From positions 1,364,001-1,428,000 of the forward strand of contig OZ281494.1 of the NCBI GenBank assembly GCA_965637545.1: 64,000 nt of DNA. The letters are read 5' to 3'. The stretch comes from Phallusia mammillata. Its lineage: Eukaryota. The position numbers and the translations under genes are program-made. Position 1 is the stretch's first letter; every line of letters begins with the position of its first letter. This document shows, one piece after another, positions 5,111 through 45,000 of this stretch. Under the pieces are notes generated by a model. It saw only the letters and a program-made list of their open reading frames with translations, searched no databases and had not been told where the DNA came from.

Positions 5111-7743
5111 ATGCCTGGGCATTGGTTGAACAAATGTTTAGAAATTTTGCTGATTGTTTATTGTTTACAAGCACAAACTGAAAGTAAGTGTCAATTAATA
5201 CTAGCTAATAAATTTTGACAGTGATTTATTTATTCAGATAATAACGCAAAGATTAAAACAAGGAAACAAAAAAGTTCAAAACATTTTAGGTTACCAAATC
5301 ACTTTTCAAGCAGTGGAGGACAGTTTATTGTTATTATCTGACGATCTTGTGGATGCAAACACTGCACAGGAGAAATGTTCGTTGCTGGGTGGAAATCTTG
5401 CAATGACTGATGACCCACAGATCAACATAACTCTCACTCAACTCATGACAGACAAATACACGACAGGTTTGCTTTGTTAAAAAGGGGAAGCTCAGCATTG
5501 TTTAAATGCAAGTTTTAGCGACAAAAGTGAGTTATTGAATATTATTAGAGATTTAACCACAAATCAACCTTTTACCGCAAGTCAACTGAATAGAACAGAA
5601 TTTGTTTCAGGATTGCAAAGGGTTTATCTTTTTTATGATCAATCTAAAAAATACGAACGCTACAAATACTCAAAAAATCAGACTGAAATTGCTTTCTGGA
5701 GTTCAACAAAATCTCTCGGACATCTGTGGTATTTCGACTTGTATAAAAGGTGAAGCTTTTTGTATGCACGTGTTGGTTTTGAGCAAACGGGCAAAAGAAC
5801 CAACCTAATAACAACTAACCTTATATCACTTGACTATATGTATAATTTTCAGTAAATCTGAAACCGAGATGCAGGACATTTACTTTTGTGATGCTCCAGA
5901 ATGGGCGACAAAAAACAAGGCTAAGTGGGGAGTCTTTATTGGTAAAACATGTGAATATCTTTTGAACGGAAATCCAAATGGTTCGTGTCACCCAGCTTGT
6001 TTACGCATATTCCTAATAATATGTAAACCATACCTCAGTAGTTACTATTTTTAGATACTTTATTAAACGTTTTCAAAATTACCTTCCATACTTCCAAGCA
6101 TCTAACTTTGCCCTCAGTGCCAAAACGTCATGGATTAATTTTTTTAAGAAACTAATGTATTTTCATTCATAATTCAATAATTATTTGAATATGCTCATTG
6201 CGTAACAACTGTGTGCGAAAACGATCACATGACCGAAACATTTTGCAGGATGGAAAGTCAGATTTACATTGTTTTCTAAAACATCAAAAGGACAAAAAGA
6301 GATATACAACTATAGAAGCAATAGCTTTGGTTCGGACAAGTTGCGCAGTGTGAATGAAACTGACGGAAATTTCTTAAACTACAAAGGATCGTTCCTGGCT
6401 CCAGGTGAGTTTTGTTTCAAAATATAAAAATACACTACGCCGGTTTGGATTCCCAAACACATACAATTTTTAGACATTAACGTTTTGGTTGGAGCTCGTC
6501 ACAACACGTCGTTGAATGGTTGGTATTGGAGCGACGGATCTTTTGCAAACTTTCCTGTTTCCAACGTTACAACTTGCCAGCAGGGAGCTTTGCATTATGG
6601 AATCGGATGGGAGCAGTCAAGCATGAACTGCAGCGGTGAACCGGCTTACTACGCCTGTCAAGTGAAACGTGAGTGTGATTATATTTATAACTTACATTAT
6701 ATAAAACTTCCCAACTGCATTGTCATATGCAGTTGTCACAACCGCAAAGACACTTCCGTGCAACGCTTCAACAGTGGTGGTCAGTTGGAGTGGACTCGAA
6801 AAATTTATCAACATAAATAGAAAATTTGCCCAAGTAATATCGTCTGTCTAAAAGTTGTTTTCTTAGTATTTGTATTAGATATCACCAGAACTTGCTTTGT
6901 CTTTTGGTTCAGGTTGAAATAAATGTTTTGGAACCAAACTGGAGAATGTATTCTTTGTACAGCGATTTGTCAAGAACTGTCAATAATCTTAACTACTCAA
7001 CTAAATACAATATCAAGGTACAATATTCTTTCCAATAACAACATAATAATAACTAGACCAGGCTGTTTGGTAACAGTGTGAGTAAATTGTCAAAGAGTGT
7101 ATTGTAATGTTTACTCATCTGGCTGATTTTTATCCCCCTTATTGTTGCAGGTAATAGTAATGCTTTGTGGTGTGCAGAGTGCTAATGTCACTTCAAATAT
7201 TGTAGTGAACACTTTCGGGAATCCCCCATCGAGTTGCTTTCCTCGAGGTGAGAAGAACATGACATGGTCCAGCATATTCCGTACATCTTGTAAGTAAAAT
7301 AGTAAGCAATTTTGATTCTATTTAGGAATTTATTTGGAAAGCAAATCGTTTGTTGTTTGGAGTCAGTAAACTATAAAATGTAAAAAAAAGTAGGCATCGG
7401 GTAGGACCAAAAACAAAAGGTAATGGTATTATATTTTAGCACTGACCACATTATCACCAACAAACCAACCAGTTGACAATGGTGGTATTTATCTGACAAT
7501 CATTGGGATTTTGGCTGGTGGAATGGTGTTTCTGGTGGTTGTGATTGTTGTATTAGTGATTTTGCTATTACGTCAAAAAATGACTAACCAAGCAACAAAC
7601 GCTAAGTCACAAAATCAAACAACAAAAGGTGAGGGAAGAAAAGTGCACAAATACTAGTTAACAAGTGATATTATGTTTTTGCAGGTTCCTCTCTCGGTAA
7701 AAATGCAAACGAGCGGGTGTACGAAACCTTTGACAAATTGTAA
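5111..7743 (+). CDS. Gene A: phosphatase-less type I receptor (SP - split CTLD with insert - 1 FN3-like - TM - short tail ending VYETFDKL), 472 aa
   Basis: 11 GT-AG exons: 5111-5183, 5290-5466, 5611-5749, 5853-5980, 6249-6404, 6474-6668, 6733-6833, 6913-7017, 7151-7247, 7440-7628, 7685-7743. Total 1419 nt, no internal stop. SP is MPGHWLNKCLEILLIVYCLQAQTE. CTLD motifs: [13 protein letters not shown] and GWYWSDGS..C..GW..MNC..YYAC. TM is IYLTIIGILAGGMVFLVVVIVVLVILLL. AATAAA at 7980. Confidence 0.88.
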
Positions 7744-10261: not shown

Positions 10262-13200
10262 ATGACTGGAGATTGGTTAAACACAGTTTTAGAAATTTAT
10301 CTGATGGTTTATTGCTTGCACGGACAAACTGAAAGTAAGTGTCAATTATCAAAGAGTTTTGAACATGCGCATGTTTAATTTCAAACAAATCAAACAAATA
10401 GGGATAAATCATTGTATGTCAGGCCTATCGAAGGCGCTATACATAATAAAGTCGATCTCGCAAACATTCCAGTATGACAAGGCATTAGAAATATCACAAC
10501 TGCTGTGGGATAAAAACCATGAAAAAAGCCTTTCAGGGTCACCCGGTCTGCCAACTGAGAGGGTTAGTTCTAATCTCGTCCAATATCAAGCCACACACAC
10601 AATTGCTTGTCACTTATGCTGCACATGTCAGCTTTGTAGGAGGCATTGTCAGTACGACTAAACGTTTGGGGATTTTTTAACTGAGGGCACATATAGTGGA
10701 GCTTCAGAAATAGAGATACCACTGGGCAGCTAAGATTAACATCTAATCAGCACTAAACCGTTCATCACAGCAGCGATTACGGCATAAACATTTGTGAATG
10801 AGTGTACGCCAGACTCATTAAAGACGATTTACCTTGTTGATGCCTTCTGATACACAAGGCAACCCGGACTGGCTTGATTAGTTATAACGCCGTCAATAGG
10901 ACGCTTTGGGACTAATCCCTGTTGTAAATGTGTGTCTTTCAAAGTCAAACATCGGTAAAACTGTAGTTTCAGCGCGATTTAGTCAAGGTATATGCATTAC
11001 GCACCGACGAAAAACAAGAAAACTTTGTAGGTTGCGAAAACAAATTTCAAGCAGTGAAGGACAGTGTGTTAATATTATCTGACGATCTTGTGGATGCAAA
11101 GACTGCACAGAAGAAATGTTTTTTGCTGGGTGGAAATCTTGCAATGACTGATGACCCACAGATAAACACAACTCTTACGCAACTCATGACAGACAAATAC
11201 ACAACAGGTTTGTTTGATGGAAATAGTAAATAGTCATTGATTTAAATGCAAGAGTTTGCAGCGACAAAACTCATTAATTCAGACCTATTGTTGATTTACA
11301 TTAGAACATAAATCCACTGTATAAAACCGAGTTGTTGTTTAGATTTGCAGCGGGTTTATGTTTTTTATGATCAATCAAAACAATACGAACGATGCAGGTA
11401 CTCAAAAAATCCGACTGAAATTGATTTCTGGAAATCAACCAAATCTCTCGGACATCTGTGGTATTTCGACTTGTATAAAAGGTAATACACATTATTAGTG
11501 ACGAAGTCTAATTTCAAAACTTGACGAATGTTGGTTTTGATCAATAGTGGTAATTTTAGTAATCAAAGACGTAAAAACTTTACCTATTCGCAACTGACCT
11601 AACACCACTGTACTTAATCATTTTCAGTAAATCTGAAACCGCGATGCAGAAAATTTATTTTTGCGATGCTCCAGGATTCGCCGCACGAAACAAGGCCAAG
11701 TGGGAAGTGTCTATCGGGACAACATGTGACTTCATTTTGAACGGACGTCTAACTGGTTGGTGTTAACCATCTTGTTTACACAAAAATCTTTACACAAAAT
11801 GCACACCACACCTCAGTGGCTACTACACAAAAATTTTCAGATACTCTATCTGATATATTTCAGACGTACTTTCTAAGACTATTAACATGACTGCCCAACG
11901 CTGTAGATAATGTTTTTGTGAAAGTGTTCTCTCAGCTCAATATTTAAGTTCAACAATTTGGCAACATATGTGAGATCTTTCACTTGATTTTCACCATTGT
12001 GCAAAATAGATCACTTGACAAATATATTTTGCAGGTTGGAGGGTAAGATTCACGTTGTATTCTGAAACTGTGAACGGTCAAAAAGAAATATACAACTACA
12101 AAAGTAGAGGCATAAACTCGGACAAGTTGCGCAGTGTTAATCAAACATTTGGAAATTTCTCACAGTACAATGGATCGTTCCTGACACCAGGTGAACATTT
12201 GGTGTAAACAACATAACACACTACTTCAGATTTGATACACCAACGTGTGCACTTTCTAGATATTAAAGTTATTGTTGGAGTTCGTTACAACACGTCGTTG
12301 AATGGTTGGTATTGGAGCGACGGATCTCAGGCAAACTTTCCCGTTTCCAACGTTACAACTTGCCAGCAGGGAGCGTTGCATTATGGGATCGGATGGGAGC
12401 AATCGAGCATGAACTGTGGTAGTGAAACAGCTTACTACGCTTGTCAAGTGAAATGTAAGTAATTACATAAACGAAAAACAAGCATCAAACAATCATTGCA
12501 TATTTCTGGGATTTGTTCCTATACTGTATAAGGTTGTAATTATTGTTTTGTTTGTTTTAGTCGCTGCAAGTGTGGAAGCATTTCCATGCAACGCTTCAAT
12601 TGCGATTGTCAGTTGGACTGGACTTGATCAATTCATCAACAATAACAATAACAACAATCTAACAGCGCAAGTAAGAACTAATTGTACCTGAAGATAATCT
12701 GACACCTAAAATATGTGATTTGTTTCTGGTGTTGTCTTTAGGTTGATATTCATGTTTTGGAAACAAACAGAAGAATTTTGGCATCATATGCAGATTTATC
12801 GACAACAATTGATAACCTAAAATTTTCAAAAAGATATAACATTAAGGTAAACGGTGTTTTAAAGTCGGCGAAAAAATATTTTATATTTATTTCATATGTG
12901 GTGTTTGTACCTGCAGCCTTGTGTTTGATAAAAACAACATCCCATTTTTTATATAAATATAAATGCAAATTAATCCAATTTTTGCTTAAAAAAATCTGAA
13001 AGTATCACGCAAAACAATTTACTCACTTTATTATTTTCAGATCACAACAATCCTTACAGGATGCCTAAAAGCTAACGTCTCAACAACCAAAGTAGTAACA
13101 ACACATGGAAACCCCCCATCGAGTTGCTATCCTAAAGGTAAACGGATGTGTTACTTGTGGTATTTGTATAAAGCTCAAAAAACATTTTCAGTAAACACGA

Positions 13201-16200
13201 CTGCAGAGACATTTCCATGCAACGCATCAACTGTGCTTGTCAGTTGGACTGGACTTGATCAAATCATCAACGAAAACGCACTAACAGCACAGGTACGAAA
13301 CAAAGTGTTGAACTATTGCTTTATGTAATTTTAAACACACATAAAAAATCAAACCAAGTAAACAAGTATTTTCCACCATAAATATCTACAGGTGACGATT
13401 GATGTCCAGGGTTGGAATCGAACAATCTCTGTTTTTTATTCCGACGGTTCCGCAACATTAGAAAATTTTTTAAACTCCACGTCGTATGATATTGAGGTTG
13501 CCAAAGTTTAATTTCACTATTTGCGTTGAAAACTATGCATCTTTTGCTGCAGCTAACAAACATTTTTGTATTCCAGGTGAAAGTGATAGCCACCGGTTCA
13601 GTTGACACTAACATCAAATGCAATCTAACAGTAACAACTCCTGGTAATCCCCCTCCAAGCTGTTTTCCTAGAGATAACACGACCTATCTTGCAAAGAGTG
13701 TTGGAATGATTGCTGGTCTAGTGATCGGGCTGTTGCTTCTGCTACTTGTCATTGTTGGGCTTGTGGTCAAGTTCATTCGTCGAATGCACAGGTTTGATCT
13801 ACCGATTTAGTTTAAACAATTATTGGGTTCGAACGGCGAGTAGTGAATCTTAAACTTAAGAGAAGGAATCTGAATTATCGCCATTAAAAAATAAAACCTT
13901 AATCGGTAGTTATGTTTTACTTATTTTCAAGTGCAGAAAAGACAAGGAGAAGTTCCAAACTGTCAAACAACTGAATCACCTCAAGGTGCCTTTAGTAAAC
14001 TCGACTTGTCCCTGCTAAAAATAAACTAAATTCAAAACCAACTACAACTTCTATTTTTACAACCAAAATTTGTTTGAAGTTCTGAAAAGTTTTTAACGTA
14101 CAATATTACACTTGCATTGGTCGTAGTAACTTGTACACATAACTGACAGGCCCGGAACTTGTAAATAATTGTAAGTACGTATAAAATTTAATATTAAATC
14201 ATAACGCAAACATTTTGGTACTTAGTTTGCTTTAACCTAAAACTTATTCTCTCATTTTCGACAATGTATTTTTTTCAACATGTTTTCTTGTTTTTCTTTT
14301 TTTTTTGTATATTTATGCCAGTCCAACCAAAAACTTTGTTTGCAGTGGCAGACGGTGTGTATCAAAACGTAGCGCATGAAGGCAGATCAAACAAAAACTT
14401 GTTCGAGTTGTTCAAGAAAAATGCTGAGTCAGTACTTCTTTTGGCCAACGAATTTGAGGTTTGACTTTTGTGGTAATAATGTCGAACAAATTTATGTTAA
14501 GCCCCAATCACCACACTGTAGTGTCTTCCCCATGCAATTTGGACGTAGTTTTGGTTTTGCAGCCCTTTCTGAAAGCAGAAATCAAGAAAGTCTAGCGTAC
14601 AAACATCGTAAATTAACAGCGTGAAAAATCATCAATAAACGAACAAAAAACACTTAAAATGGACTTTGGAACTTACACTCTAATCACAAGAACAGCCAGA
14701 CCAAGTGAGACCAATTTATAAACATTTTCAGGAAGTTCAAAACAAAAGCAAAAACAACCAGAGAACAAGGGACGTGTCACAGTTGCCGCAAAATGCTGCG
14801 AGAAACCGCTACAAGGACATTTTCCCATGTAAGTACTGCAACACAAAATGTAAAGTAGCTAGATCAATTAGGTTCTACCATTTGCCTAATTGTTTCATGT
14901 CGGAAACAGTGTATGGCAGAAACAATGTTGCAATGTTTGTCTTTTGCAAGCTCGCAGTAAACCAAGAATAGAAATAAACCTTATTACAAAAGATAAACTG
15001 ATGCTGTTTGCTTTACACTTATAGAGAGGAGTAGTCAAACAAAGTCCTGTTTTCTTAAAACTGACAAATGCTTTCATTAGCACTGCCTTAAAAACAACAC
15101 AGACAAATAGGTTGTGCATAAAGAGCACATTGTGAGAATGTTTTTACAACGGGTGATTCAATTATGCAAACAGTTGCACGTATAACTGGCTTACTGCAGT
15201 AACAACTTGTGTTTGTTTAATAGACGATCATGCTCGAGTAGTTTTGCAAGGAAGCGGTGGAAACGATTACATCAACGCCGCTTATATACCGGGTTACGAT
15301 AACGAGAGGAAGTTCATCGCCACTCAGGGTCCGAAGAAGGAGACAATCAGCGATTTCTGGTTGATGGTTTGGCAGGAAAACTCGAACATCATCGTAATGC
15401 TCACTGGTTTGGTGGAAAACGGAAAGGTGAGTTTTGTTAATTAACAGCTTGGTGTAGAGTGTGGTGTGAAATTTACTGCAAATGCTTAGGTTTGATCTTG
15501 AATATTATGTAATACGTTTATATCATTTGGCTCAGTGAACCTGCATTGTAAAACCATTCAAGTAAGTGTGTCAATTTTAATCCATTTTCTTTTTTCAGTA
15601 ACCACGCCTTCATGCAATGCATCTGTTATCAGATTCCAACCAATGCAGCTTTACAATACGAAGCTATTTCGGTTTCCGTATGCGATGTAAATGAAAGCAA
15701 CCTGTACAATCTGATTACCGTCGACCTCCGGTCTGCAACTAAGGCATTCGTAAGTTAAACTTTTACTTGAACTGTTAACTTTTAAATCACATTTCTTTTT
15801 AGGCCATCGTACAAAGTGAGTATGATTTATGTACGTTGTGCCATTGATGCAAATCCACGTGGCATTGGGCAGTATAAAAATATCACTAAGTAACAGTGCT
15901 GTTCAAAACGTAGCTTAACTTGTTTATAGACTGCCCAGCAATTGCTGCTTGTGCAAGTCAAGGGATGGAGTGACGTGGAACGACCGCCCAAAGAAATTGA
16001 TTTTATCAAAATTATCGAGAAAATGCAACTGATGAAGGCAAAACAGAATTGCCAGTGTGTGTTGGTTGCTTGCAGGTAAACCTTGTGCCTGTATCGCATT
16101 GATTCGTGTCAGCCATAATTTTCAATAACCCTAAACACAAATCGTGTCTACACCTGAAGCCCACCTTCGCTACATTTTCCAATACGACTTGTTCTTTATC

Positions 16201-16480
16201 GCAGTAACGGATGAACGAGAACTGGGACTTTCATCGCTCTGGTGAACATTCTCGAACGTTTGAAGGCTCTAAAGCGGGTGGATGTATTCCGAACTGTGAA
16301 AGACCTGAGAGATATGAGACCGAATATGGTCGACAACAAGGTAGTGTTTTACGTAAGCTTCAGAAATAAAGATTGCGTCTTCAAGCAATGTTTATGTTTT
16401 TACAGGAACTCTATAAATACTGCTACTCGGTCGTCATGCATTATCTGTCTGATTTCGACACTTATTCAAACTTCAAGTGA
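10262..16480 (+). pseudogene. Gene B: intact SP-CTLD/insert-2xFN3-TM, followed by a crippled PTP region (may encode a truncated receptor)
   Basis: Open exons: 10262-10334, 11031-11207, 11343-11481, 11628-11755, 12035-12190, 12260-12454, 12561-12670, 12742-12846, 13041-13137, 13192-13292, 13392-13496, 13577-13791. Lesions: the juxtamembrane acceptor is altered at ~13929-13931 (CAA versus CAG in F); a ~1.5-kb deletion at ~15555 removes the CEQYW, WPD and HCSAGxGR exons; TGA at 16212-16214 in D2. Last exon 16406-16480 is [24 protein letters not shown]. Confidence 0.85.
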
Positions 16481-17689
16481 CATACACCAAAAAATACCTA
16501 GCATAACAAACGGGACAAAATTTATCCAATATACAAATTGTAAGTTATTACGTCAATTCGCACAAGAAGCATCTTTGGTTATTGTTTTTATACGTACTTG
16601 TGCTTACTTGATCTGTCTGTTTGTTTGTTTGTTTGTTGTATACGTGCGCTCAATTTATTCGTTTGTTTGTGTGAAGCACATCTGAGTGAAAATGTCGCAT
16701 GAAAAGCCGCTCACCACAGATACGAATGTTTTCAATGCGTTTCTTTGCTTAAAAATTTTACAACTAACTGTCTCCTGACCCATTGCATTCACTTCAAAAA
16801 CACTGAAAAACTTCCGCAAACTGTTTCAATAGTTTAATGACGACCCTGATCAGTGTTGACTTGCATATTATTTATTTAGAATGAGGTATATGAACACCAA
16901 ACCAAACCTCTCAATACCTTGTCATCATTTTGTAATGTTAACAGTCATTTTAATATCAGAATATCTTCATACGCACATTACGAAAATAAGCATTTCGGGT
17001 ACAACGAAACTTTTTCCCCGAAAATCCCCGAAAATGGCTACGTGGAAAATAAACAAAATCAGCTGCATTGCAAAGAAACGCCCCTTTTTGTTGTTTGGTC
17101 CACCCCAATTGAAAAATTTATCTATTTTAGAATCGGTTTTGTGTTTATATATTTGGTGACGTGTCCAAGCCAAGTCTTTGAAAATGGTTACGTGTCATAA
17201 CGATTACGTTAATATGTTGAACTGCATTAGCCCTACGTTTACGACATGAAGATGTGGCATGCGAATATCAAGACACAAAGGTTTTGTACAAAAATGGGAC
17301 AGTAGATTCTGAATTCCAAGTTTCTTCTACACACTGATACCTTTACATTCATGGAATTCAAAATTGTTCCCCAGAGCGTTTCGATATTAGTCCCCAAAAA
17401 ATTTACCCACGAGTGAAATCATAGATCGACAAAACAACGAAGCACGAAATCAAAGACATTCAGCAGAAATTACAGAAGAACAACGAAAAAACGTTAATAC
17501 AGGAAAATAAACATGTTTCTGAATCGTAATTACGCAAAAATGTGATTGCTCTTGAACTAAAATCAGTCTTTAATGGTTGTTTTTAAAGGGAGAAGTTATT
17601 TGACAACCAACGATAAACGAAACACACACTTGTCCTACGATAAAAGTATTTTTCAAAATAGTTAACAGTGGACAATAAATGCGTATAAG

Positions 17690-20600
17690 TCACTTGAAGT
17701 TAGAATAAGTGTCAAAATCGGAAAGATATTGCATGACGACCGAGTAGCAGTATCTGTAGAGTTCCTGTAACAACAAATAGACATTATTTGAAGACTCACT
17801 AACTGGACAGTGTTTATTTCAGCCCCCAATCGCTAAGTATTCACCAGCGCTCTCGTTATTAGTGTAACGCTCCATAAGGTCACTTACGCCCAATTTGATA
17901 ATTACTGCTTTAATACTTTATTTTGTAATGATTAAACTTATTGCGGAACCACAAACAGGATTTGAAAAACATTACCTTGTTGTCGACCATATTCGGTCTC
18001 ATATCTCTCAGGTCTTTCACAGTTCGGAACACATCCAGCCGCTTTTGGACCTTCAAACGTTCGAGAATGCTGACCAGAGCGATGAAGGTTCCAGTTCTGG
18101 TTGATCCATTGCTGTAAACACATCAATATTACAGAATCAGGTATTTTGCGTTCAGACCAGAAAAACGGCTTTAGGCATTTGTTTTCCCCAGATGAAAGGA
18201 ATGGTTCGCACCCACTAGTTTAAATGGGTTTTAAATGTGTAGGAACTCGTAGTTATATGTCAAAACATGTTGATTATGTTTGAAATCAAACTTAATTAGG
18301 GTAGTTCAACAGGACTTGGTTTCTCAGCTCAGATTTGAGTTTAATTTCGTTTAAAAATTTGCCCGAAAAACAATTACTGTTGACAACAGTAAAGCGTAAG
18401 CTCTTAATGAGCTGCTGTCGCGGTTTTAAATCCCAAATTTATTGAGTTTGGACTTTTCTTCCACTCGCCTTTTCATATAAACGTCCGTATGAGACCGGCA
18501 TAACTCGGCATTTCGCCTCTAATTAGTTGTTGTGCGTTTCCACAAACAAATATTTAGACGTGGTATCCAAGTAAAACATTACCTGCATCCTACCAACACA
18601 CACTTGCAATTCAGTTTGGTCTTTAGTCGTTGCATTTCCTCAATAATTTTGATGAGATCCATTTCTTTCGGGGGTTGTCCCACGTCACTCCATCCCTTGA
18701 CTTGCAAAAGCATCACTTGCTGGGCAGCCTGACACAAAACAAGGGTTTTATTCAACTTTGTGAGAACAACTATAGTTTTGTTGAAAACAAGGAAAGCTTT
18801 AGTGTGGTTTGACTTTGCCATTTCTTTAATTACAAGATAAGGAATAATTCACCACGAAAAAGTGTTAAGATATTTTTTTGTTAAACGGTAAAGAATTAAA
18901 TCGAAACTCTTGTTTGAAACTTAGGCCATTACAGTACGCATGTTTCCATATTTGATATTGCTATACATAACGCAAACTCTCCTTGCCAACCTGTAATAAC
19001 CCTTCCAAAATACTCTCCATACAAAAAAGTATTATAATCTGTGCTGTTCGGAAGTTATTAACTTACAAAGGCGTTGGTTGTTGACCAAACGTTAACAGTT
19101 ATCAGATTGTGAAAGTTGCTTTCATTCACATCACGTACAGAAACCGAAATGTCTTCATATTGTATGGCTGTATTGATTAGAATCTAAAAAAGATGTATGA
19201 TATATAGTAAAGGCCTATTATAGAAAGATATAAACTGTCAAATTTACTTGAATGCTGTTGTCCAAATCAACGACAAGTGAAGCTCCTCGTTCAACGATCA
19301 TCTTCCAGAAGTTTTCTTTTTCTCCTGGACCAGGATTTCTTGCTGCGACAAGGCAGTCTAAAGAGCCATGTTCCTGTAAAGAGAAACCTTTGCATTTGAT
19401 TGACCACACTCCAAAATGCATTCGATTGATCCTGATTGGTTTTAGTGGAATGGTAATTAAATGCAGCATTCTGACTCCAAAAAAATCACATCTCGAAAGT
19501 TATTACCTGGATATATGAAGCATCTAACTGCTGTATGCTTTTATTCTTATTGTTGTTGACTTTGACTGATGTGTTCTTGTCTAAAAACAAATATTGTGTG
19601 TGATAGGATAAAATATTAAATATTTTTAGTGAATTATTTACATGTTCTCAGCTGTGGGTGATTTTCCTGCCATTCTTCGCCAAATCTCCACGATGACAGC
19701 GTGTTGAATTCTTTGTCTTGCATTTTCTTACTAGAACAGAAACCTTTGCTGTTTCATCTTATCAATTAGCCTAGTACTAAAACAATATGTGTACAATATG
19801 CCTAAGCGATCGTATGTCACATTCGCTTATACTGTACATAGCAAAGGTTTAACAATAAAAGTTTCACAAATCAACCGGTTTGGTCAAGTGCTTAAATATC
19901 CTACTATCTAACATACTACTAATCTGTTTGGGTGCAAGTCGTTTTTAAACGATACAAGATAATACAACTACTAAAAGGGTAACAGCCCTGTATCCAAACT
20001 AACAAAATAAAACATTTGGCAGCTAATTAGTCACATTTCACTTGAAGTCATCGACTGGAGTTCAGTCACATCTTTATCTGTTTCCTCCAAACTTTCACGC
20101 TCCATAAGCAGTTTGTAGACGTACATGTATTGTTTCTGTAGAAAATATACACTATTGAAACTGATTTAGGCGATACTAAAATTTGTTGCCAGCACATTAG
20201 CTAAACCAAAATGTTGTAATGAAACGGCAGACGAACAATCGTAATCAAATTTAGTCAAAATTATGGTCAAGTAAACACAAATGTTAGTAATGCTTAAGAT
20301 TCATATTCAGGTTTACAACGCCTCTAGACCAGTGCATGCGCAAATGGTTCACGTTTATTGACGGCGAGAATTATCATGGGGTCCCATACTTACGTAACTG
20401 CTTTCAATGTCAAGTTGTGTATTGAAGATAAAAATACACAGCAATAACATAACTATAGTCATATCGATTAATAACATCAGGCCAACTAAAGTCTAATGTA
20501 AGTAAAGCTTACCGTTCAAAGTTAGGTTTTTTGAAAGTATATGATTAATTTATCAAGTACAATTGGGTGATGATCAGCTTACCACATTTTGAATCATGTC

Positions 20601-30739: not shown

Positions 30740-31020
30740 ACCCGAAGATTTTAACAAATACACATTCCACTTCTCCGTTCGCCTGTTTTTCCAAGCCTCG
30801 CAAATGTAAATTCATTCCATCGTGTTTTCAGGATTCCTGCCTGATATAATTCGGTTTAATTGATAGTAACAAGTTTATAATTATCTCCTTTTCACCTTTT
30901 GAACAAGTCGAAATACCACAGATGTCCGAGAGATTTTGTACTTTTGGGGAAATTTACTTTAACCGAATTATTTCTGTATTTTCATAATCTATTATTTTCA
31001 TCATCTAACTAGGCCTTATC
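30740..31020 (-). pseudogene. Remnant of insert exons 3-4 of the receptor family (duplicate at 63754-64000)
   Basis: [13 protein letters not shown]|GT ends at 30896. The next exon (from 30836) reads NPENTME*IYICEAWKNRRTEKWNV with TGA at 30814-30812. Confidence 0.8.
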
Positions 31021-31079
31021 TGTACTTAAGCTTTCTAACTAACATTAGTTCATTCACAACAGTCTAGCTAAAATGTACA

Positions 31080-33858: not shown

Positions 33859-35199
33859 CGTTCCAATTTCCTTTGTTGTCTAGGCCTTCACAATTTCTTT
33901 CAATTGTTACATTCCACTTCTCCTTTTCAATTTTCCTGTTTTTACAAGCCTCGCAGAAATATATTGGTTTCATTGTGTTTTCGGGGTAAAAATTCTGTCT
34001 ACTTCAGTGGTTCTCAACCTGGGGTCCGCGCAAAGCGTTTTCGGGGGGTCCGCGACAACTTTCAAAATTTGCAGACAACGAGATTGATAAACTTGATTTA
34101 AAAAATATGTTTTAGCGTTTCAAAAAAGCATGAAACTTGTTTTTCAAAAAAGCATGAAACTTGTAAAACATTCTTCAAAGGCAAAAACCAAAATGCATTA
34201 TGATATATTAACCCCATTGTGATGCATCGGAGGTAAATTGTCAGTGGCAAACTACGTCACATCACAATGCATTGGCTCTCATTTTATGGGGTCCGATGTC
34301 GCAGCCCAGACAAAGGGATTGACATTTTGATCCCGCACCAAACATGGTTGGTATTTTATGCGTCATGTATCGGTTGCTTGTTATAAAAAATGTGTGAAAA
34401 TTACCAACACCTTCAGAGGGGTCCGCGATTTGCCTGCTAGTATCAAAAGAGAACCACTGGTCTAATTGAGAGTGAGAAGTTTGTAAATATCTGGTTTGAA
34501 CCTTTCATACAAGTGAATTTAAACCAATTTTTCCGCTGATCCAATCGGTAATTACCAGTTTATAATTATCTGTTTTTCACCATTTATGCAAGACGAAATA
34601 CCACAGATGTCCGAGAGGTTTTCTCCTTTTCCAGAAATCCACTTCAGCTGAATTGTTTGAGCATTTATATCGTTCATATGTGACGGGGTCATCAAAAATA
34701 TAAACCCGTTGCAAATCTAAAGGAAAGTTTGTTTCATAACCTTTATTTAAACAAGTTTTATTTTTTCTATACGGTTGATTTGCATTTAATAATCTTAAGA
34801 GTTTGTTTTGAAAATGTAATTTTTTTACAAACCTGTTGTATATTTGTCGGACACACTTTCTTTCACTGCTTGCATCGTTTTGTTGCATCCTGGAAAACAC
34901 CTCGTTGTTGCACTGTAATTGTTTGATGCAATAAATTGTTCAACGCAATACCACGCTTGATTTTGGGCAATTGCAGTGCATGTGGCAGAGTAAATTGCAA
35001 AAATAGGCAAAATTAAATACCCCAACGAACGGATATTAACAGTTTTGTTATTAAAAGTTGACTCACCGTGAATAGAAACCAAGCAATCAGATATTAACAC
35101 TTTTAAAAAGTAAAACAAAAAATTACATTTAGTTTGTGCGGTTATAACCCGAACCATCATTAAAATAACCACAATCGTGCTGATGTAAGGCTAACTCAT
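33859..35199 (-). pseudogene. Gene E: 5' fragment of the receptor family (SP exon, internally deleted CTLD exon, two insert exons)
   Basis: SP exon 35199-35127 (73 nt, TAG at codon 3). Exon 2 at 34889-34833 is only 57 nt (120 nt deleted in frame). Exon 3 at 34716-34581 reads DLQRVYIF..LGHLWYF. Exon 4 (IYFCEACK..WNVTIERNC..GNWNG) ends at 33859 and has no in-frame acceptor. Confidence 0.8.
34005..34459. mobile_element. hAT-type MITE inside pseudogene E
   Basis: TIRs CAGTGGTTCTC (34005) and GAGAACCACTG (34449-34459). 8-bp TSD GTCTACTT/GTCTAATT with central TA. GGGGTCCG subterminal repeats. Confidence 0.85.
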
Positions 35200-35689: not shown

Positions 35690-35860
35690 ATTACGCATTC
35701 GAAACGCCGCGCGCGCGCGAGCGCCGCGCACGAGACGCGCCGCTCATCCGACACGCAATCGAGCGCGACGCGCGTTCGCTCATCCGGCGAAACTCCACAG
35801 CTGGCGGACGACGCGTTTTTCATTCAACCAGCGAAACTCCACAGCTGGCGGACGACACTA
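35690..35860. repeat. CpG-rich patch with a 26-bp direct repeat GCGAAACTCCACAGCTGGCGGACGAC (35787-35812, 35831-35856)
   Basis: Read directly from the sequence; function unknown. Confidence 0.6.
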
Positions 35861-38800: not shown

Positions 38801-39281
38801 ACTTATACTTATTTTAATTACACAGCTTCAGCACAGATAAGGCTCGGTTCAAATGCGAGCAAAGCAGCACCGCAAGGAGTCCAAGTATGATACAGTAACT
38901 ATACAATTTAAAACGATGGCTATTCAAAGCTGCAGACAGATAAGGTTTCGTCAGTGCAGTTGGTAACAATACACTGGCCGTGTTGGCCGATATACTCAAT
39001 TGCGGCAAATCAAGTTGTTTTCTGCATTTTTTTTTTAAATCAAGTTGATTTCTGCAGCCGATGGTAACAACAAGCAGAAGCAGAAAGTGACCTTAATTTT
39101 GTTCATTGTGACAAACCAGACGTAATGACTTGGGTTTACACCAGCAAGATTGTGATTATTATTATGATGGTTTATATTATAACCGCACAAATTAAATGTA
39201 AGTGTCACTTTATCCGTTTGTGATTAATTAAGAAGCAAATGCTTCTGACTCAAAATCAGTAGACACTGGGTTGGTATATTC

Positions 39282-39319
39282 GAGATATATATTTCACCTA
39301 TTCAGGCATCGTCAGTCTC
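39282..39319 (-). ncRNA. Candidate minimal hammerhead ribozyme (mirror copy, left arm)
   Basis: Exact reverse complement of 41982-42019. Confidence 0.6.
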
Positions 39320-40633
39320 TAAAAACTGCAAACAACGAAGGTAAATCAAAAGAGAACAGATGTAACAGCATACAAAATAAAATAGTAAAAAACTTAAAAC
39401 AATAAAAGCATTTATGTCTAGTTTGGTTAACACAGTCTACACGAGCACAAAAGCGTAAATGTAACAAGGACGAAAAAACAGACGCGACGGCGGAAAAAAG
39501 GAGAAAAGGTGAGAGGCGTAAAACGGAAAAAGATAACGTCAACAGACACGCGCAAGATTAGAAATAACTCTGCGAATCAGCGCAATCTAGGTAAAACCAT
39601 TTTTTGAATATTGATGATGGCCTGTGTTATTTTAAGCCACTTGGCTTCACATGCATCCAGGTCTTTAGGTGCCGGCTGCTGTAGAAACGTTACGCTAAAA
39701 CATTGTGTTATGTCGGGGTGTGTTGAAAAAACTGCTATGTGTTTTGTGGCGTAGTGGTGCAATAATGCTGCATTGTCATTTTCCTCATTTACTTTGTGTT
39801 CTTTCCATGTGGATCTGTGATGTGTCCAACGGGTGCTAAACCGGTTTTTTGTTTGTCCAATGTATTGCGCGCTGCATATGTTGCAAGTAGCCGCATATAT
39901 GCCGTAGCACTTGCAGTCCAGGTCTTGTTTCAATTCTAAAACTTGTCCGTGTGTTGTGAACTTGCGCTGTTTATAAACCATGCTCTTATGACTACCATGA
40001 TTGCCACACAAAGCACACTTTTCGCAAGGGCGCGACTGGCCGACGGGTTGTTTTGGCGCATGGGCCAAGCTTCTGTAATTAGTCAGAAGGTTCCCCAGGG
40101 TACTTGCTCTTTTATAAACTACAGTCGCGGAAAGTTGTAAGTCCCTTTCCTTAGCTGTTAACTTCAAGGCCTGTGGGAAAGCTGTACCCCAAGCTATCCT
40201 TGGTTTGCGGGATCGACAAGTTGGTGACGCGAACCGTTTCATCCAAGTTTTCGAAACACTTAAACACTGTTCTGTAATGCGTTCGGGAAACGCAGATCTT
40301 TGGCACTTTTCCCTGAGTCGTTCCAGACTGGTGAAATAGTCTTTGTCCAACTCATTCAGCCTTCCTAATCTGCTGGCCTCACCCAACACAATGCCCCGAA
40401 ATACATGTGAAGGGTGATGGGAAGTTCCGTGCAGGAAGCAACGGTGTTTGCTTGTTTCTTTCACGTGGTCTTTGGTGACGAAATGTAACTTTGTAACACT
40501 TGAATAGCAGTGCAAAACATCAAGAAATTCCACACTCCCTTTCCGATCTCTATTGGAAAATTCCCGAAATGTGAGCTTTAAACCGGATTTGTGAAAAGCA
40601 GCTTGCAACGCTGACTTTATTTCCTTGGTGGCT

Positions 40634-40833
40634 NNNNNNNNNNNNNNNNNNNNNNNNNNNNNNNNNNNNNNNNNNNNNNNNNNNNNNNNNNNNNNNNNNN
40701 NNNNNNNNNNNNNNNNNNNNNNNNNNNNNNNNNNNNNNNNNNNNNNNNNNNNNNNNNNNNNNNNNNNNNNNNNNNNNNNNNNNNNNNNNNNNNNNNNNNN
40801 NNNNNNNNNNNNNNNNNNNNNNNNNNNNNNNNN
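40634..40833. other. 200-N scaffold gap whose flanks overlap by 69 bp
   Basis: 40565-40633 is repeated exactly at 40834-40902. Confidence 0.95.
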
Positions 40834-41981
40834 CGAAATGTGAGCTTTAAACCGGATTTGTGAAAAGCAGCTTGCAACGCTGACTTTATTTCCTTGGTGG
40901 CTTCCCGTCCAAACGATATTCTGTGGAGCAGATTAAGAAGGCTGAATGAGTTGGACAAAGACTATTTCACCAGTCTGGAACGACTCAGGGAAAAGTGCCA
41001 AAGATCTGCGTTTCCCGAACGCATTACAGAACAGTGTTTAAGTGTTTCGAAAACTTGGATGAAACGGTTCGCGTCACCAACTTGTCGATCCCGCAAACCA
41101 AGGATAGCTTGGGGTACAGCTTTCCCACAGGCCTTGAAGTTAACAGCTAAGGAAAGGGACTTACAACTTTCCGCGACTGTAGTTTATAAAAGAGCAAGTA
41201 CCCTGGGGAACCTTCTGACTAATTACAGAAGCTTGGCCCATGCGCCAAAACAACCCGTCGGCCAGTCGCGCCCTTGCGAAAAGTGTGCTTTGTGTGGCAA
41301 TCATGGTAGTCATAAGAGCATGGTTTATAAACAGCGCAAGTTCACAACACACGGACAAGTTTTAGAATTGAAACAAGACCTGGACTGCAAGTGCTACGGC
41401 ATATATGCGGCTACTTGCAACATATGCAGCGCGCAATACATTGGACAAACAAAAAACCGGTTTAGCACCCGTTGGACACATCACAGATCCACATGGAAAG
41501 AACACAAAGTAAATGAGGAAAATGACAATGCAGCATTATTGCACCACTACGCCACAAAACACATAGCAGTTTTTTCAACACACCCCGACATAACACAATG
41601 TTTTAGCGTAACGTTTCTACAGTAGCCGGCACCTAAAGACCTGGATGCATGTGAAGCCAAGTGGATTAAAATAACACAGGCCACCATCAATATTCAAAAA
41701 ATGGTTTTACCTAGATTGCGCTGATTCGCAGAGTTATTTCTAATCTTGCGCGTGTCTGTTGACGTTATCTTTTTCCGTTTTACGCCTCTCACCTTTTCTC
41801 CTTTTTTCCGCCGTCGCGTCTGTTTTTTCGTCCTTGTTACATTTACGCTTTTGTGCTCGTGTAGACTGTGTTAACCAAACTAGACATAAATGCTTTTATT
41901 GTTTTAAGTTTTTTACTATTTTATTTTGTATGCTGTTACATCTGTTCTCTTTTGATTTACCTTCGTTGTTTGCAGTTTTTA

Positions 41982-42019
41982 GAGACTGACGATGCCTGAA
42001 TAGGTGAAATATATATCTC
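41982..42019 (+). ncRNA. Candidate minimal type I hammerhead ribozyme in the Penelope 3' region
   Basis: GAGA-CUGACGA-U-GCCU[GAAU]AGGU-GAAA-UAUAUA-UCUC. This gives the core CUGANGA...GAAA, a 4-bp stem II, a palindromic minimal stem III, an AUA cleavage triplet and a 4-bp stem I. PLEs are known carriers of minimal hammerheads. Confidence 0.65.
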
Positions 42020-45000
42020 GAATATACCAACCCAGTGTCTACTGATTTTGAGTCAGAAGCATTTGCTTCTTAATTAATCATTTACTGAAAGAATTTTGAC
42101 TCAGTGATCGTGGATATTAACATGCCTACTATTAGAGGGACAGATCCGGTGAATAGCATTTATGTTTATCCGTTTGTAGGGCTATTTATTTATTTTTGCT
42201 ATCAATTGTGCCAAATGCACTGCAATTTTTTAAAACTTAACGTGTTAATCGGTTAAACAACTTATTTGGCAAAATATTTGCAGAAATCAGTTAACAATGA
42301 GGTACTCTCCAGGTTGCAACAAAACTTGTCAAGCAGTGAAGGAAAGTGTGTTGATATTATCTGACGATCTTATGGATGCAAACACTGCACTGGAGAAATG
42401 TTCTTTGTTGGGTGGAAATCTTGCAATGACTGCTGACCCGCAGATCAACACAACTCTCACTCAAATCATGACAGACAAATACACGACAGGTTGGCATATG
42501 TGCATCTGATATTAAGGCTTGGCAACAAAGTACAACATATAGACCCAACTGCCTGTCTCAACAAAGCGTTATTTTAGACTTGCAGCGGGTTTATATTTTT
42601 TTTGAGCCGGACAAATATGAACGATGCAAATACTCATATAGTTCGGCTGAACTGGATTTCTGGAAAAGTACAAAATCTCTCGGACATCTGTGGTATTTCG
42701 ACTTGTACAGAAGGTGAAAAAAAGGAACAAATTTGTCACTATCAATTAAACCTAATTATGTTGAACAGGAATCTTGAAAAGGCGATGGAATCAATTTACA
42801 TTTGTGAGGCATGGAAAAACAGGAGGCTGGAGACATGGAAAGTGAACATTGGAAGAAATTGTGCACGCCTAGACGGCGATGGAAATTGGAACGGTTAGTT
42901 ATCGTTGTAGCCAGATCAACAACACTGATTGGATCACAATATTATATTGAAACCTAAACTTATTTCTACTGTTTATGGTTTAGGTCTGTCAGGAACAAAA
43001 AAATTTTTTAATTTCTTTGAACGCACTTACAAATATTTGCAGGATGGAATCTGCGATATTCTTTATTTTCCGACACTAAAACAAGAAAACGCCAAAAACA
43101 AATGTTTATTTATGGAAGCATCGGTTTAATGAGTGGAAGCAAATTGCGAAGTGCCAATAAACCGTTTGAAAGCTTTAACAAATCAGATGGATCGTTCCTG
43201 GCACCAAGTGAGCGTTTGGTCTTAAAACGTATAACTTCTACCTCATGTTAAAAAAGTATTTTTACCGTATTCACCGTATTTTTAGAAGTCGACGTGTTTG
43301 TTGGAGCTCGTTACAACACGTCGTTGCATGGCTGGTATTGGAGCGACGGATCTCCAGCAAACTTTCCCGTTTCCAACGTTACAATTTGCCAGCAGGGAGC
43401 GTTGCATTATGAGATCGAATGGGAGCAGTCAAGCATGAACTCCAGTGGGGAACCGGCTTACTACGCTTGTCAAGTAAAATGTGAGTAATTACAATCTTTT
43501 TAAGTGTGTAAAATGTTTCGGTAAGATGTTCTTGTTTTTTTTTTTGGAAAGTTAAGTAATCGTGACCTTATTTAACTTTCGCAAACATTTACTGTAACGT
43601 CTGAAATCACGTTTAGTCAATGCTACTGTGGAGACATTTCCATGCAACGCTTCAACTGTGCTTGTCAATTGGACTGGACTTGATCAATTCATCAACAACA
43701 ACAATCTAACAGCGCAAGTAAGAACCAATCGTCCCTAGAGATAATCTAACATAAGTTTAAGAAATGTGATTTGTTTCTGATGTTGTCTTTAGGTTGAGAT
43801 TCATGTTTTGGAAACAAACAGAAGAATTTCGGCTCCATATGCAGATCTATCGACTAACATAGAGAATCTAAGATTTTCAAAAACATATATCATTAAAGTA
43901 AACGGCTACAAAAAATTTGAAAGCATCGTGCAAATCAATTTACCCACTTTATAATTTACAGGTCACAGCAATGCTTCTCAACGACCAAAATAGTAACAAC
44001 ATATGGAATCCCCCCATCGAGTTGCTATCCAAAAGGTAAGCGAATGTGTCACGTCTGCTATTTGTATAAACCCCAAAACACGTTCTTTTAGTAAACACGA
44101 CTGCAGAAACATTTCCATGTAACGCTTCTACTGTGCTTGTCGGTTGGAATGGACTCGATCATTTCATCAACGAAAACGCACTTACAGCGCAGGTATGAAG
44201 CAAAATCTGTAATATTTGCTTTATGTACATCAAAACAGAAGTAAAGTAGGAAAAACAAAAGAAATAAACCAAAGAAACCAGAATTTTCTATCATAAATAC
44301 CTGCAGGTTGCGATTGATGTCCAGGGTTGGAATCGAACAATCTCTGTTCCTTATTCCGACAGTTCCGCGACATTAGAAAATCTTTTAAACTCTGCTTTGC
44401 ATGATATTAAGGTAACCGTAGTTTCCTTTCATTGGTTGAAAACTACGTATCTTTTACTGGAATTAACTTACATTTTTGTACGTCCAGGTCACAGCGATTG
44501 TCACTGGTTCAATCAACACAAACATCACATCCAATTTGAAAGTAAGAACTCCGGGAAATCCGCCTCCAAGCTGTTTTCGTGAAGACATCCCGACCAATAC
44601 TGCAATGAGTGTTGCAAAGATTGCTGGTCTGGTGATTGGGTTGTTGCTTCTGCTGCTTGCCATTGTTGTGTCGTTGGTCATGTTTATTCGTCGAAGGCAC
44701 AGGTTTGATTTTAAACTTCGGATTTATATTGCAGCTAATTGTCAAAGTGCAGAGAAACTGTAAACAAAAATCTGAAAGTAATTTAAGTTAACATTGATAA
44801 AGAGGAATCTAACTCCCTTCATATAAATAAAAACCTTAAACCTGAAATATGTTTTACGTATTTGCAGGTACAGCAAAGAAGTTTCAAATCCTCAAATTCT
44901 TGCATCACCTCAAGGTGCCTTTGTTAAACTCGACTTGCCCATATATTTAAGATTGCTTATGTAAGAGCTTGAAAATACTTGAAAAAGTACAAAATACAAC

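What the first reader, a model, noticed from the sequence alone, without database searches (positions are those of the whole stretch)
5611..43207. Variability is concentrated in the inserted domain while the flanking CTLD halves stay conserved
Seen: CTLD exons keep fixed lengths (177 and 195 nt) and near-identical stretches in A, B, D and F. Insert exon 4 varies in length (128/128/104/125 nt) and sequence. A: MQDIYFCDAPEWATKNKAKWGVFIGKTCEY. D: [29 protein letters not shown]: MESIYICEAWKNRRLETWKVNIGRNCAR. Only IYxC, WxVxIGxxC and a few others are kept. Exon 5 varies similarly. Inference: a constant scaffold with a diversifying ligand-binding module.
Basis: partly seen in the sequence, partly recalled or inferred. 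Interest (0 to 1): 0.75.

Follow-up and report, generated by a model that had tools for sequence, protein, structure and literature searches.

The report
Lectin exons kept alike by gene conversion
In a sea-squirt family of over 100 receptor genes, the two halves of a lectin-like domain look constant mainly because the gene copies keep overwriting each other's exons, while the module between them has drifted into old sub-families with little sign of selection for novelty.

Summary
Copies A, B, D, F and a fifth copy, D', share fixed CTLD exons (177 and 195 nt).

The cause is mostly not a constrained scaffold next to a positively selected module.
- **Synonymous divergence:** dS is 0.22-0.30 in the CTLD exons and 0.9-1.9 in the insert. 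Flanking introns cannot be aligned.
- **dN/dS:** it is similar in both parts (ML 0.37 against 0.50; exon 2 0.55, exon 4 0.66).
- **Trees:** across 33 of at least 118 genomic copies, the CTLD tree is star-like and conflicts with the well-resolved insert tree (AU p 0.0017).
- **Shape of the signal:** synonymous divergence dips in mid-exon and rises at the exon edges.
- **Young duplicates:** they differ more in CTLD exons than in introns.
- **Outgroup:** against Clavelina, the CTLD N-half is only 29% identical.

Together these point to exon-confined gene conversion.

The insert has a constrained framework (omega 0.1-0.4) and near-neutral loops (0.5-0.8). Loops exceed 1 only in the youngest clade (3.4, p 0.004). 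A family-wide site-model signal disappears once gap-adjacent columns are removed.

The assembly gap touches no compared exon.

The scan reached the same reading earlier on other DNA of this genome (s1-394850). My tests agree.

The parts
5290..6668 (+). Copy A, exons 2-6: 5290-5466 (CTLD N-half, 177 nt), 5611-5749, 5853-5980, 6249-6404 (insert: 139, 128, 156 nt), 6474-6668 (CTLD C-half, 195 nt)
Evidence: Read directly, AG/GT at every border, phases 1/1/2/1/1.
11031..12454 (+). Copy B, exons 2-6: 11031-11207, 11343-11481, 11628-11755, 12035-12190, 12260-12454
   Evidence: Best-scoring AG..GT open exons of the right phase. A and B align through their introns at about 80%.
28694..30117 (-). Copy D, exons 2-6: 29941-30117, 29650-29782, 29485-29588, 28978-29142, 28694-28888
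   Evidence: A putative signal-peptide exon lies at 30180-30252. PTP exons lie further down the minus strand, at 22468-17696.
42313..43480 (+). Copy F, exons 2-6: 42313-42489, 42578-42713, 42769-42893, 43043-43207, 43286-43480
   Evidence: PTP D1 and D2 exons lie at 46335-49015.
61708..63131 (-).
   Evidence: It differs from D by two non-synonymous changes in exon 4 and one synonymous change in exon 6.
40634..40833 (.). Assembly gap (200 N), flanked by an identical 69-nt direct repeat (40565-40633 and 40834-40902)
   Evidence: No family exon lies within 1.4 kb.
39221..42080 (.). Inverted repeat around the gap: arms 39221-40374 and 40927-42080, 99.65% identical
30731..30981 (-). Orphan insert exons (exon 3-like and exon 4-like only) upstream of D; the same pair sits at 63745-63995 upstream of D'
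   Evidence: tblastn with family exon peptides.
33875..34714 (-). Orphan exon 3-like (34583-34714) and exon 4-like (33875-33982) pair with no CTLD exons nearby
   Evidence: blastn matches to B and F exon 3.
12556..30986 (.). Segmental duplication partner of 43612-64000, with identity rising in steps from about 80% through 93% to 98.8%. B and F share this 3' backbone but carry inserts of different sub-families.
   Evidence: Self-blastn; feature identities for B against F.

Best explanation
The window holds five members of a very large sea-squirt family, with at least 118 exon-6 copies in the genome and about 94 of them in the first 1.8 Mb of contig C1. The genes encode type-I receptor tyrosine phosphatases.

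Their N-terminal lectin-like domain (CTLD) is split after helix alpha-2 by a module of about 140 residues. Three exons encode this module in this genome.

1. Concerted evolution, the main cause. The two CTLD exons are islands of homology that keep exchanging sequence among paralogs by short gene-conversion tracts. This holds their divergence at a plateau of about 10-15% of nucleotides (dS about 0.25). The introns and insert exons fell below the identity needed for exchange long ago. They keep their true, saturated divergence and have sorted into about six old sub-families.

2. Weaker intrinsic constraint on the insert, the minor cause. About half of its columns form a conserved framework under purifying selection. 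The other half are indel-rich loops that evolve almost neutrally.

Positive selection on the loops is suggested only in the youngest expanding clade.

What is shown: the exon structure, the dS contrast, the tree conflict, the mid-exon valley, the excess CTLD divergence in young duplicates and the outgroup comparison. What is inferred: gene conversion as the molecular process, and any role of the insert in binding.
For: - **Window pairs:** CTLD dS is 0.22-0.30 for every non-trivial pair; insert dS is 0.9-1.9; omega is 0.30-0.52 (CTLD) against 0.20-0.44 (insert).
- **Family set, 33 distinct complete copies, 528 pairs:** median pS is 0.21 against 0.56. CTLD pS stays near 0.2 whatever the insert divergence. 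For the closest pairs it exceeds insert pS (0.09-0.13 against 0.02-0.08).
- **Young duplicates:** L031-L068 has 14 synonymous differences over 78 CTLD sites although its introns are 88-95% identical. This argues against constraint on synonymous sites.
- **Distant pairs:** CTLD exons are 85-91% identical while the introns beside them are at forced-alignment level. Similarity runs a median of 3 nt past the exon border. About 1% of pairs share 40-76 nt of intron, which looks like tracts that crossed the border.
- **Trees:** the insert tree has sub-families with 95-100% bootstrap. The CTLD tree is star-like, with deep support of 12-50%. AU rejects the insert topology on CTLD data (delta lnL 70, p 0.0017) and the reverse (delta lnL 559, p 1e-4).
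- **Sliding pS between sub-families:** 0.05-0.19 in mid exon 2 and 0.09-0.22 in mid exon 6, rising to 0.3-0.46 at the exon edges. pN stays flat at about 0.05. Equally conserved insert peptides keep pS at 0.47-0.66.
- **Shared alleles:** within young clades, 70 of 104 variable CTLD sites carry two alleles that both also occur outside the clade, against 28.5 expected from new mutations.
- **Mosaics:** L050 and L051 are 99-100% identical from exon 3 onward, but 93% in exon 2 and 42% upstream. B and F share a 3' backbone but not the insert.
- **Outgroup (Clavelina lepadiformis):** the ratio of cross-species to within-genome distance is 7.0 for the CTLD and 2.9 for the insert. Exon 2 is 29% identical across species.
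- **Clavelina paralogs P0016 and P0014:** the CTLD C-half is not homogenised (dS 1.64) and is only 64% identical. This is roughly what this family would look like without conversion.
- **Selection:** ML omega is 0.37 (CTLD) against 0.50 (insert). Within clades, the insert is at 0.38-0.52 in five clades. Framework columns are at 0.10-0.42 and loops at 0.51-0.77, with 3.4 in the youngest clade.
Against: - The flanking introns are not homogenised. A simple conversion model with random tract ends would predict that they are. I explain this by the need for homology on both sides of a tract, but no single tract was caught with a named donor.
- The 40 extra copies were the best exon-6 matches to copy A, so exon-6 similarity is somewhat over-sampled. 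Exon 2 was not used for the selection and is even more uniform. The five unselected window copies show the same contrast.
- Insert dS is saturated, so omega between sub-families is imprecise.
- NG86 and my own M1a/M2a code use fixed or simplified settings. The M0 log-likelihood matched IQ-TREE's.
- The shared-allele test ignores rate differences between sites. The insert also exceeds its own null, by 1.4-fold against 2.5-fold for the CTLD.
- 12 of the 40 fetched copies gave incomplete models, and several window copies carry lesions, so some of the variation may come from decaying genes.
Confidence: 0.75

Rival explanations
1. One reading: the CTLD halves are an invariant scaffold held by strong purifying selection, and the insert is a ligand-binding module driven apart by positive diversifying selection.
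For: - Using all insert columns, M2a beats M1a (LRT 51, about 9% of sites at omega 3). The CTLD gives LRT 6.
- Exon 4 has the highest omega (0.66).
- Loop columns of the youngest clade reach omega 3.4 (p 0.0036) while the framework stays at 0.42.
- The closest pairs have pooled insert omega of 1.1-1.8.
- The close Clavelina pair has insert omega of 0.94.
Against: - The M2a signal falls to LRT 3.3 (p 0.19) without gap and gap-adjacent columns.
- Insert omega is significantly below 1 in five of six clades.
- Exon 2 of the 'scaffold' has omega 0.55, above exons 3 and 5.
- The three- to five-fold difference in divergence lies in dS, not in omega.
- The scaffold is 29-46% identical to Clavelina's, so it is not constant over time.
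Confidence: 0.15
2. The CTLD exons carry a function at the nucleotide level, such as splicing enhancers, an RNA structure or an overlapping element. That function constrains synonymous sites, so low dS reflects selection and not exchange.
For: Low pS is limited to the exons and is deepest in mid-exon. Similarity stops at the splice sites.
Against: - Young duplicates differ at CTLD synonymous sites as much as, or more than, in their introns.
- The CTLD tree conflicts with the insert tree.
- Differences between sister copies reuse alleles found in other paralogs.
- From published work, splicing-related constraint is strongest near exon ends. That is the opposite of the valley seen here.
- In Clavelina, the C-half exon has dS 1.0-1.6 between old paralogs.
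Confidence: 0.05
3. Most of the insert's variation is neutral decay. Many copies are pseudogenes whose CTLD exons are passively refreshed by conversion from working copies.
For: - 12 of 40 fetched copies gave incomplete exon sets, and five identical broken copies exist.
- D, D' and F lack the third canonical cysteine.
- B lacks the D1 catalytic exons.
- Orphan insert exons occur in the window.
- Whole-insert omega in the youngest clade is 1.4, not different from 1.
Against: - Framework columns of the insert are under purifying selection in every clade (omega 0.10-0.42).
- All 33 analysed copies keep open exons with AG/GT borders.
- The same framework is kept in Clavelina.
Confidence: 0.1

Closest known systems
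Concerted evolution by exon-restricted gene conversion in tandem immune-receptor families, for example the CEACAM/CEA family (PMC7042247, abstract only, seen)
   Same: Paralogs are far more alike in particular exons than their age allows. Conversion acts exon by exon. Some segments or members escape and diverge.
   Different: As I recall the CEACAM literature (the abstract I saw does not say this), the homogenised exon there encodes the ligand-binding N domain of paired receptors. Here the homogenised exons are the two halves of the host domain and the nested module escapes. The family here is much larger (at least 118 copies) and the effector is a tandem phosphatase.
Clustered protocadherin variable exons, where conversion homogenises part of the ectodomain-coding sequence while other parts stay diverse (from my own knowledge of Noonan et al. 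2004; not checked here)
   Same: Regionally restricted conversion inside a large tandem array of cell-surface receptors gives a constant part and a variable part with no difference in mechanism beyond homology and selection.
   Different: Those are single large exons spliced to shared constant exons. Here each copy is a full multi-exon gene and the borders of the homogenised tracts coincide with exon borders.
NK-receptor-type C-type lectin-like domains (CD94/KLRD1, NKR-P1, CLEC2D, Dectin-1)
   Same: They are the best structure-database matches of the family profile. The domain is compact, with the four canonical cysteines and no EPN/QPD or WND calcium-sugar motif (read from the alignment).
   Different: Those are type-II membrane proteins with an uninterrupted domain and no phosphatase. 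Here the domain is N-terminal on a type-I receptor phosphatase and is split by about 140 residues.
Clavelina lepadiformis LOC143463404 (P0016, 1090 aa), P0022, and LOC143463089 (P0014/P0035, 592 aa, named 'C-type lectin domain-containing protein' by UniRef)
   Same: Same architecture: split CTLD with the homologous insert, a stalk, a membrane span, and two PTP domains or none. The CTLD N-half exon is 177 nt in phase 1-1 in both species.
   Different: Only three protein clusters were found there, against at least 118 exon copies here. The insert is in two exons, not three. The C-half is not homogenised between old paralogs (dS 1.0-1.6).

Membership tests
C-type lectin-like domain (Pfam PF00059 Lectin_C) | Match to the Lectin_C profile at or above the gathering score | tested here: not met
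   Single exons of the window give no Pfam hit even at E 10. The Clavelina homologue P0016:1-290 scores 19.4 bits against a cut-off of 22.6, over profile positions 41-106 only, which is the C-half.
C-type lectin-like domain (Pfam PF00059 Lectin_C) | Both halves align to complementary halves of solved CTLDs | tested here: met
   A profile of alignment A2 hits 29 PDB sequences at E up to 1, and 28 of them are CTLDs. The best are sea raven antifreeze protein (E 9.5e-4) and KLRD1 (E 0.0016). Alignments run from the N-half straight into the C-half, skipping the insert. In a single-sequence search, residues 10-69 match CLEC6A 16-75 and residues 194-263 match lithostathine 72-141. The E-values are weak.
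C-type lectin-like domain (Pfam PF00059 Lectin_C) | Four canonical cysteines (C1-C4 and C2-C3) and the WIGL-type and WxWxDG motifs | tested here: met
   In the alignment, A, B and all 28 fetched copies keep the cysteines of ..QEKC....TTCQQ....MNC.. and ..YACQ... They also keep LIGAR and GWYWSDGS. D, D' and F have lost the third cysteine.
C-type lectin-like domain (Pfam PF00059 Lectin_C) | The CTLD fold in a structure model | tested here: inconclusive
   AlphaFold2 on P0016:5-280 with the shallow alignment A2 gave mean pLDDT 46 and pTM 0.31. That is too low for a fold search, so none was run.
Calcium-dependent carbohydrate-binding C-type lectins (a subset of CTLDs) | EPN or QPD motif together with WND | tested here: not met
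   Read from the alignment: no EPN or QPD, and WEQ stands where WND would be. The family should not be called a sugar-binding lectin on this evidence.
Classical receptor-type protein tyrosine phosphatase with tandem D1-D2 domains | Y_phosphatase domains with WPD and C(X)5R motifs behind a membrane span | tested here: met
   P0016 matches PF00102 at E 9.8e-105 in two stretches. tblastn places D1 and D2 exons behind B, D, F and D'. FIATQGP and WPDHGIP are present. VHC | SAGVGRTG is split by an intron in D and F. A has no PTP exons, and B lacks the D1 catalytic exons.
Gene family under concerted evolution by gene conversion | Paralogs more alike than their age, at synonymous sites too, with trees that conflict between segments | tested here: met
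   dS 0.22-0.30 against 0.9-1.9. AU tests p 0.0017 and 1e-4. Mid-exon valley of pS. Outgroup distance ratio 7.0 against 2.9.
Gene family under concerted evolution by gene conversion | Individual conversion tracts with an identified donor and recipient | not tested
The only hints are mosaics (L050/L051; B/F) and rare shared intron flanks.
Diversifying (positively selected) recognition module | A class of well-aligned codons with omega significantly above 1 | tested here: inconclusive
   LRT 51 with all columns, but 3.3 (p 0.19) with strict columns. Exon 4 strict columns (14 codons) give LRT 10.3, p 0.006. Loop columns reach omega 3.4, p 0.0036, in one of six clades and 0.51-0.77 in the others.

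The most novel reading that the evidence does not exclude
The two homogenised CTLD half-exons may act as constant homology arms. These arms would let the insert cassette between them be swapped among more than 100 receptor-phosphatase backbones. Together with bursts of positive selection on the cassette's loops in young clades, this would build a germline-encoded, combinatorially shuffled recognition repertoire, perhaps for microbes or for self/non-self. The hints are the B/F and L050/L051 mosaics, the orphan insert exons, the conflict between trees, and omega 3.4 in the loops of the youngest clade.
Probability: 0.15. Interest if true: 0.7.

Novelty: new member of a known kind. Interest (0 to 1): 0.38.

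Why it matters
A pattern of constant flanks around a variable core in a large receptor family invites an immune-style reading. Here most of the pattern is a by-product of gene conversion, and that has practical consequences. Similarity between these exons cannot be used to date the duplications. Protein identity overstates constraint on the lectin-like halves. Selection scans on this family need recombination-aware methods.

The family is worth study in its own right. It has at least 118 copies of a receptor phosphatase with a split lectin-like head, against three protein clusters found for Clavelina. I found no description of it in the papers I could search. Its youngest clade gives a testable hint of adaptive change in the nested module's loops.

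Tried and rejected
- **Pfam on single exons:** nothing, even at E 10.
- **Word search with A's exon-6 open frame:** nothing.
- **Word searches with the Clavelina proteins:** P0016 found only itself and P0022; P0014 found only itself.
- **Exhaustive search with exon 6:** 21 hits, the best at 58% identity. Most are short exon fragments from metagenome assemblies.
- **Fetching more copies:** The analysis therefore rests on 33 distinct complete copies.
- **Alignment A1:** 140 exon pieces were aligned to the Clavelina proteins to deepen the fold alignment. MAFFT smeared exons 2-5 across the columns, so A1 was discarded.
- **Structure:** AlphaFold2 on A2 gave pLDDT 46. No fold search was run and variable sites could not be mapped onto a structure.
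- **DUF7023:** a weak hit on the Clavelina insert (E 2e-4, below cut-off), with no match in this genome. The lead was dropped.
- **ESM Atlas on the insert:** scores of 0.88, uninformative.
- **Family-wide positive selection:** rejected as a firm claim after the strict-column control.
- **First Clavelina exon-mapping script:** it failed on its filters and was replaced by per-residue codon mapping. A few edge codons there are noisy.
- **Papers:** four searches found no paper on this family or on split-CTLD receptor phosphatases.
- **Spliced proteins of this genome:** they were used only inside scripts. They were not submitted to any search or fold tool, so that joined step was left out.

Full report
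**What is there.** Earlier notes of the scan say the window comes from a sea-squirt genome. It maps to G000:C1:1364001-1428000.

I rebuilt exons 2-6 of four copies, A, B, D and F, and found a fifth, D', at 61.7-63.1 kb. Every exon has AG/GT borders, and the five exons form a phase 1-1 unit. Exon 2 is 177 nt and exon 6 is 195 nt in all copies.

**The gap.** The Ns at 40634-40833 lie 1.48 kb upstream of F exon 2, so no compared exon or reading frame crosses them. The 69 nt on each side of the gap are identical. The gap sits in the spacer of a 1.15-kb inverted repeat of 99.65% identity. Continuity across it remains unknown, and I filled nothing in. F's first exon could not be placed.

**What the genes are.** No Pfam model hits any single exon. 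An exhaustive search with exon 6 found only 21 proteins. Three of the proteins recovered are full-length proteins of the ascidian Clavelina lepadiformis.

These proteins show the whole architecture. After a signal peptide comes a lectin-like N-half, then the homologous insert, then the C-half. A stalk and a membrane span follow. The protein ends with two PTP domains (Y_phosphatase, E 1e-104) or with none (P0014).

tblastn places D1 and D2 phosphatase exons behind B, D, F and D' in the window. The catalytic VHC | SAGVGRTG motif is split by an intron.

The CTLD assignment rests on weak but coherent evidence:
- The Lectin_C profile hits the C-half only, below threshold.
- A family profile hits 28 CTLDs among 29 PDB matches, and the alignments skip the insert.
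- The four canonical cysteines and the WxWxDG motif are present.
- There is no EPN/QPD or WND motif, so sugar binding should not be assumed.

A structure model of the Clavelina head was too poor to use (pLDDT 46). The spliced proteins of this genome were handled only inside scripts. They were not sent to search or fold tools, so that joined step was left out.

**Family size.** Exon 6 has at least 118 matches in the genome. About 94 lie in the first 1.83 Mb of contig C1, nine at C4:22.8 Mb, four at C1:6.6 Mb, and a few divergent ones elsewhere. Together with the window copies, this gave 33 distinct complete exon 2-6 models.

**Why the CTLD halves look constant.** In the window pairs, synonymous divergence is 0.22-0.30 in the CTLD exons and 0.9-1.9 in the insert. 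dN/dS is 0.30-0.52 and 0.20-0.44 respectively.

Across 528 family pairs, median pS is 0.21 against 0.56. CTLD pS stays near 0.2 however far the inserts have diverged.

Between distant copies, the CTLD exons are 85-91% identical while the introns beside them are at forced-alignment level. Similarity extends a median of 3 nt beyond the exon border.

The rest of the evidence points to sequence exchange, not constraint:
- The insert tree resolves about six sub-families with 95-100% support. The CTLD tree is star-like. AU tests reject each topology on the other's data (p 0.0017 and 1e-4).
- Between sub-families, pS forms a valley inside each CTLD exon: 0.05-0.2 in the middle and 0.3-0.46 at the edges. 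pN stays flat near 0.05. Equally conserved insert peptides keep pS at 0.47-0.66. This shape fits short tracts that need homology on both sides. It is the opposite of splice-enhancer constraint, which from published work is strongest near exon ends.
- Young duplicates whose introns are 88-98% identical differ at 11-20% of CTLD synonymous sites. Two thirds of those differences reuse alleles present in other paralogs, against 27% expected from new mutations.
- Mosaic genes exist (L050/L051; B against F).

**The outgroup.** Against the Clavelina proteins, exon 2 is 29% identical and exon 6 is 46% identical. The ratio of cross-species to within-genome distance is 7.0 for the CTLD and 2.9 for the insert. 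The halves are therefore too alike within this genome for the rate at which they really evolve.

Between the old Clavelina paralogs P0016 and P0014, the C-half has dS 1.64 and 64% identity, with omega 0.17. The insert has dS 1.74, 41% identity and omega 0.32. Only the N-half shows low dS there (0.32). This gives a rough picture of the family without homogenisation: the insert is intrinsically about 1.5 to 2 times less constrained, and no more than that.

**Is the insert diversifying?**
- ML omega is 0.50 for the insert and 0.37 for the CTLD. Exon 4 is highest (0.66), but exon 2 (0.55) exceeds exons 3 and 5.
- My site-class test reproduced IQ-TREE's M0 likelihood. With all columns it gives LRT 51 for a class at omega 3. 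Without gap and gap-adjacent columns and near-duplicate copies it gives LRT 3.3, p 0.19.
- Within clades, where alignment is unambiguous, insert omega is 0.38-0.52 in five clades and 1.4 (not different from 1) in the youngest.
- I split insert columns into framework and loops, using only the other clades to define them. Framework columns come out at 0.10-0.42 and loops at 0.51-0.77, except in the youngest clade. There loops reach 3.4 (p 0.0036, about 0.02 after correcting for six tests).

So the genes are under selection, the loops are close to neutral, and adaptive change is only suggested in one young clade. The close Clavelina pair shows the same tendency, with insert omega 0.94.

**Verdict.** The pattern is real. 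Its main cause is exon-confined concerted evolution of the two lectin-like exons in a very large tandem family. The nested module is a moderately less constrained part that escaped homogenisation.

An earlier follow-up of the scan, on a cluster 445 kb upstream (s1-394850), reached the same reading, and my independent tests agree with it. The mechanism is a known kind. I found no description of the family in the papers I could search.

**Limits.**
- Only a third of the family was sampled, and it was chosen by exon-6 similarity.
- Insert dS is saturated.
- There are no recombination-aware site models, no population data and no transcripts from this species.
- No usable structure was obtained.

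Noticed in passing
window 12556-30986 and 43612-64000: A segmental duplication of about 18-20 kb, offset by about 33 kb, whose identity rises in steps from about 80-84% through 92-93% to 98.8% along its length. It looks like layered duplication or a large recent conversion.
   Followed up: partly
window 40565-40902: The 69 nt on each side of the assembly gap are identical. Either the contig ends overlap or a repeat blocked the assembler.
   Followed up: partly
window 39221-40374 and 40927-42080: A 1.15-kb inverted repeat of 99.65% identity is centred on the gap and ends 233 nt before F exon 2. It could be a fold-back assembly artefact or a real palindrome that removed F's first exon.
   Followed up: no
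window 30731-30981(-), 33875-34714(-), 63745-63995(-): Orphan pairs of exon 3-like and exon 4-like sequence with no CTLD exons beside them. They are remnants of insert cassettes.
   Followed up: partly
window 28694-28888(-), 61708-61902(-), 43286-43480(+): D, D' and F have lost the third canonical CTLD cysteine (..SSMNC.. has become ..SSMNY.. or ..SSMNS..), which all other analysed copies keep. Its partner cysteine would be left unpaired.
   Followed up: no
window 15429-15933(+), compared with 46542-48473(+): B lacks the exons for the D1 catalytic core (WPD and C(X)5R) that F has. About 1.47 kb of F (46658-48131) has no counterpart in B. A has no phosphatase exons at all.
   Followed up: partly
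window 29485-29588(-) against 62499-62602(-): D and D' differ in the insert only by two non-synonymous changes in exon 4. One of them hits the otherwise invariant I of the ..IG..C motif.
   Followed up: no
window 20589-20927(-) and 47036-47321(+): An intron splits the phosphatase active-site motif directly after VHC, and SAGVGRTG follows in the next exon.
   Followed up: yes
L053-L057 (G000:C1 at 1.29, 1.30, 1.49, 1.68 and 1.69 Mb): Five identical copies in both orientations of a member for which no good exon 5 could be found. A broken gene has been amplified recently by segmental duplication.
   Followed up: no
L064 (G000:C1:0.68 Mb) against L065 (G000:C4:22.88 Mb): These copies on different contigs are nearly identical, introns included (95-100%). 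The nine-copy C4 cluster may be a very recent inter-chromosomal duplication or assembly redundancy.
   Followed up: no
L071-L073 (Clavelina lepadiformis loci): The CTLD N-half exon is 177 nt in phase 1-1, as in this genome. The insert is in two exons (about 117 and 264 nt) instead of three, so the intron between exons 4 and 5 is either specific to this lineage or was lost in Clavelina.
   Followed up: partly
window 5111-5183(+) and 30180-30252(-): Putative 73-nt signal-peptide exons with GTAAGT donors lie just upstream of exon 2 in A and D. No equivalent was found for B or F.
   Followed up: partly
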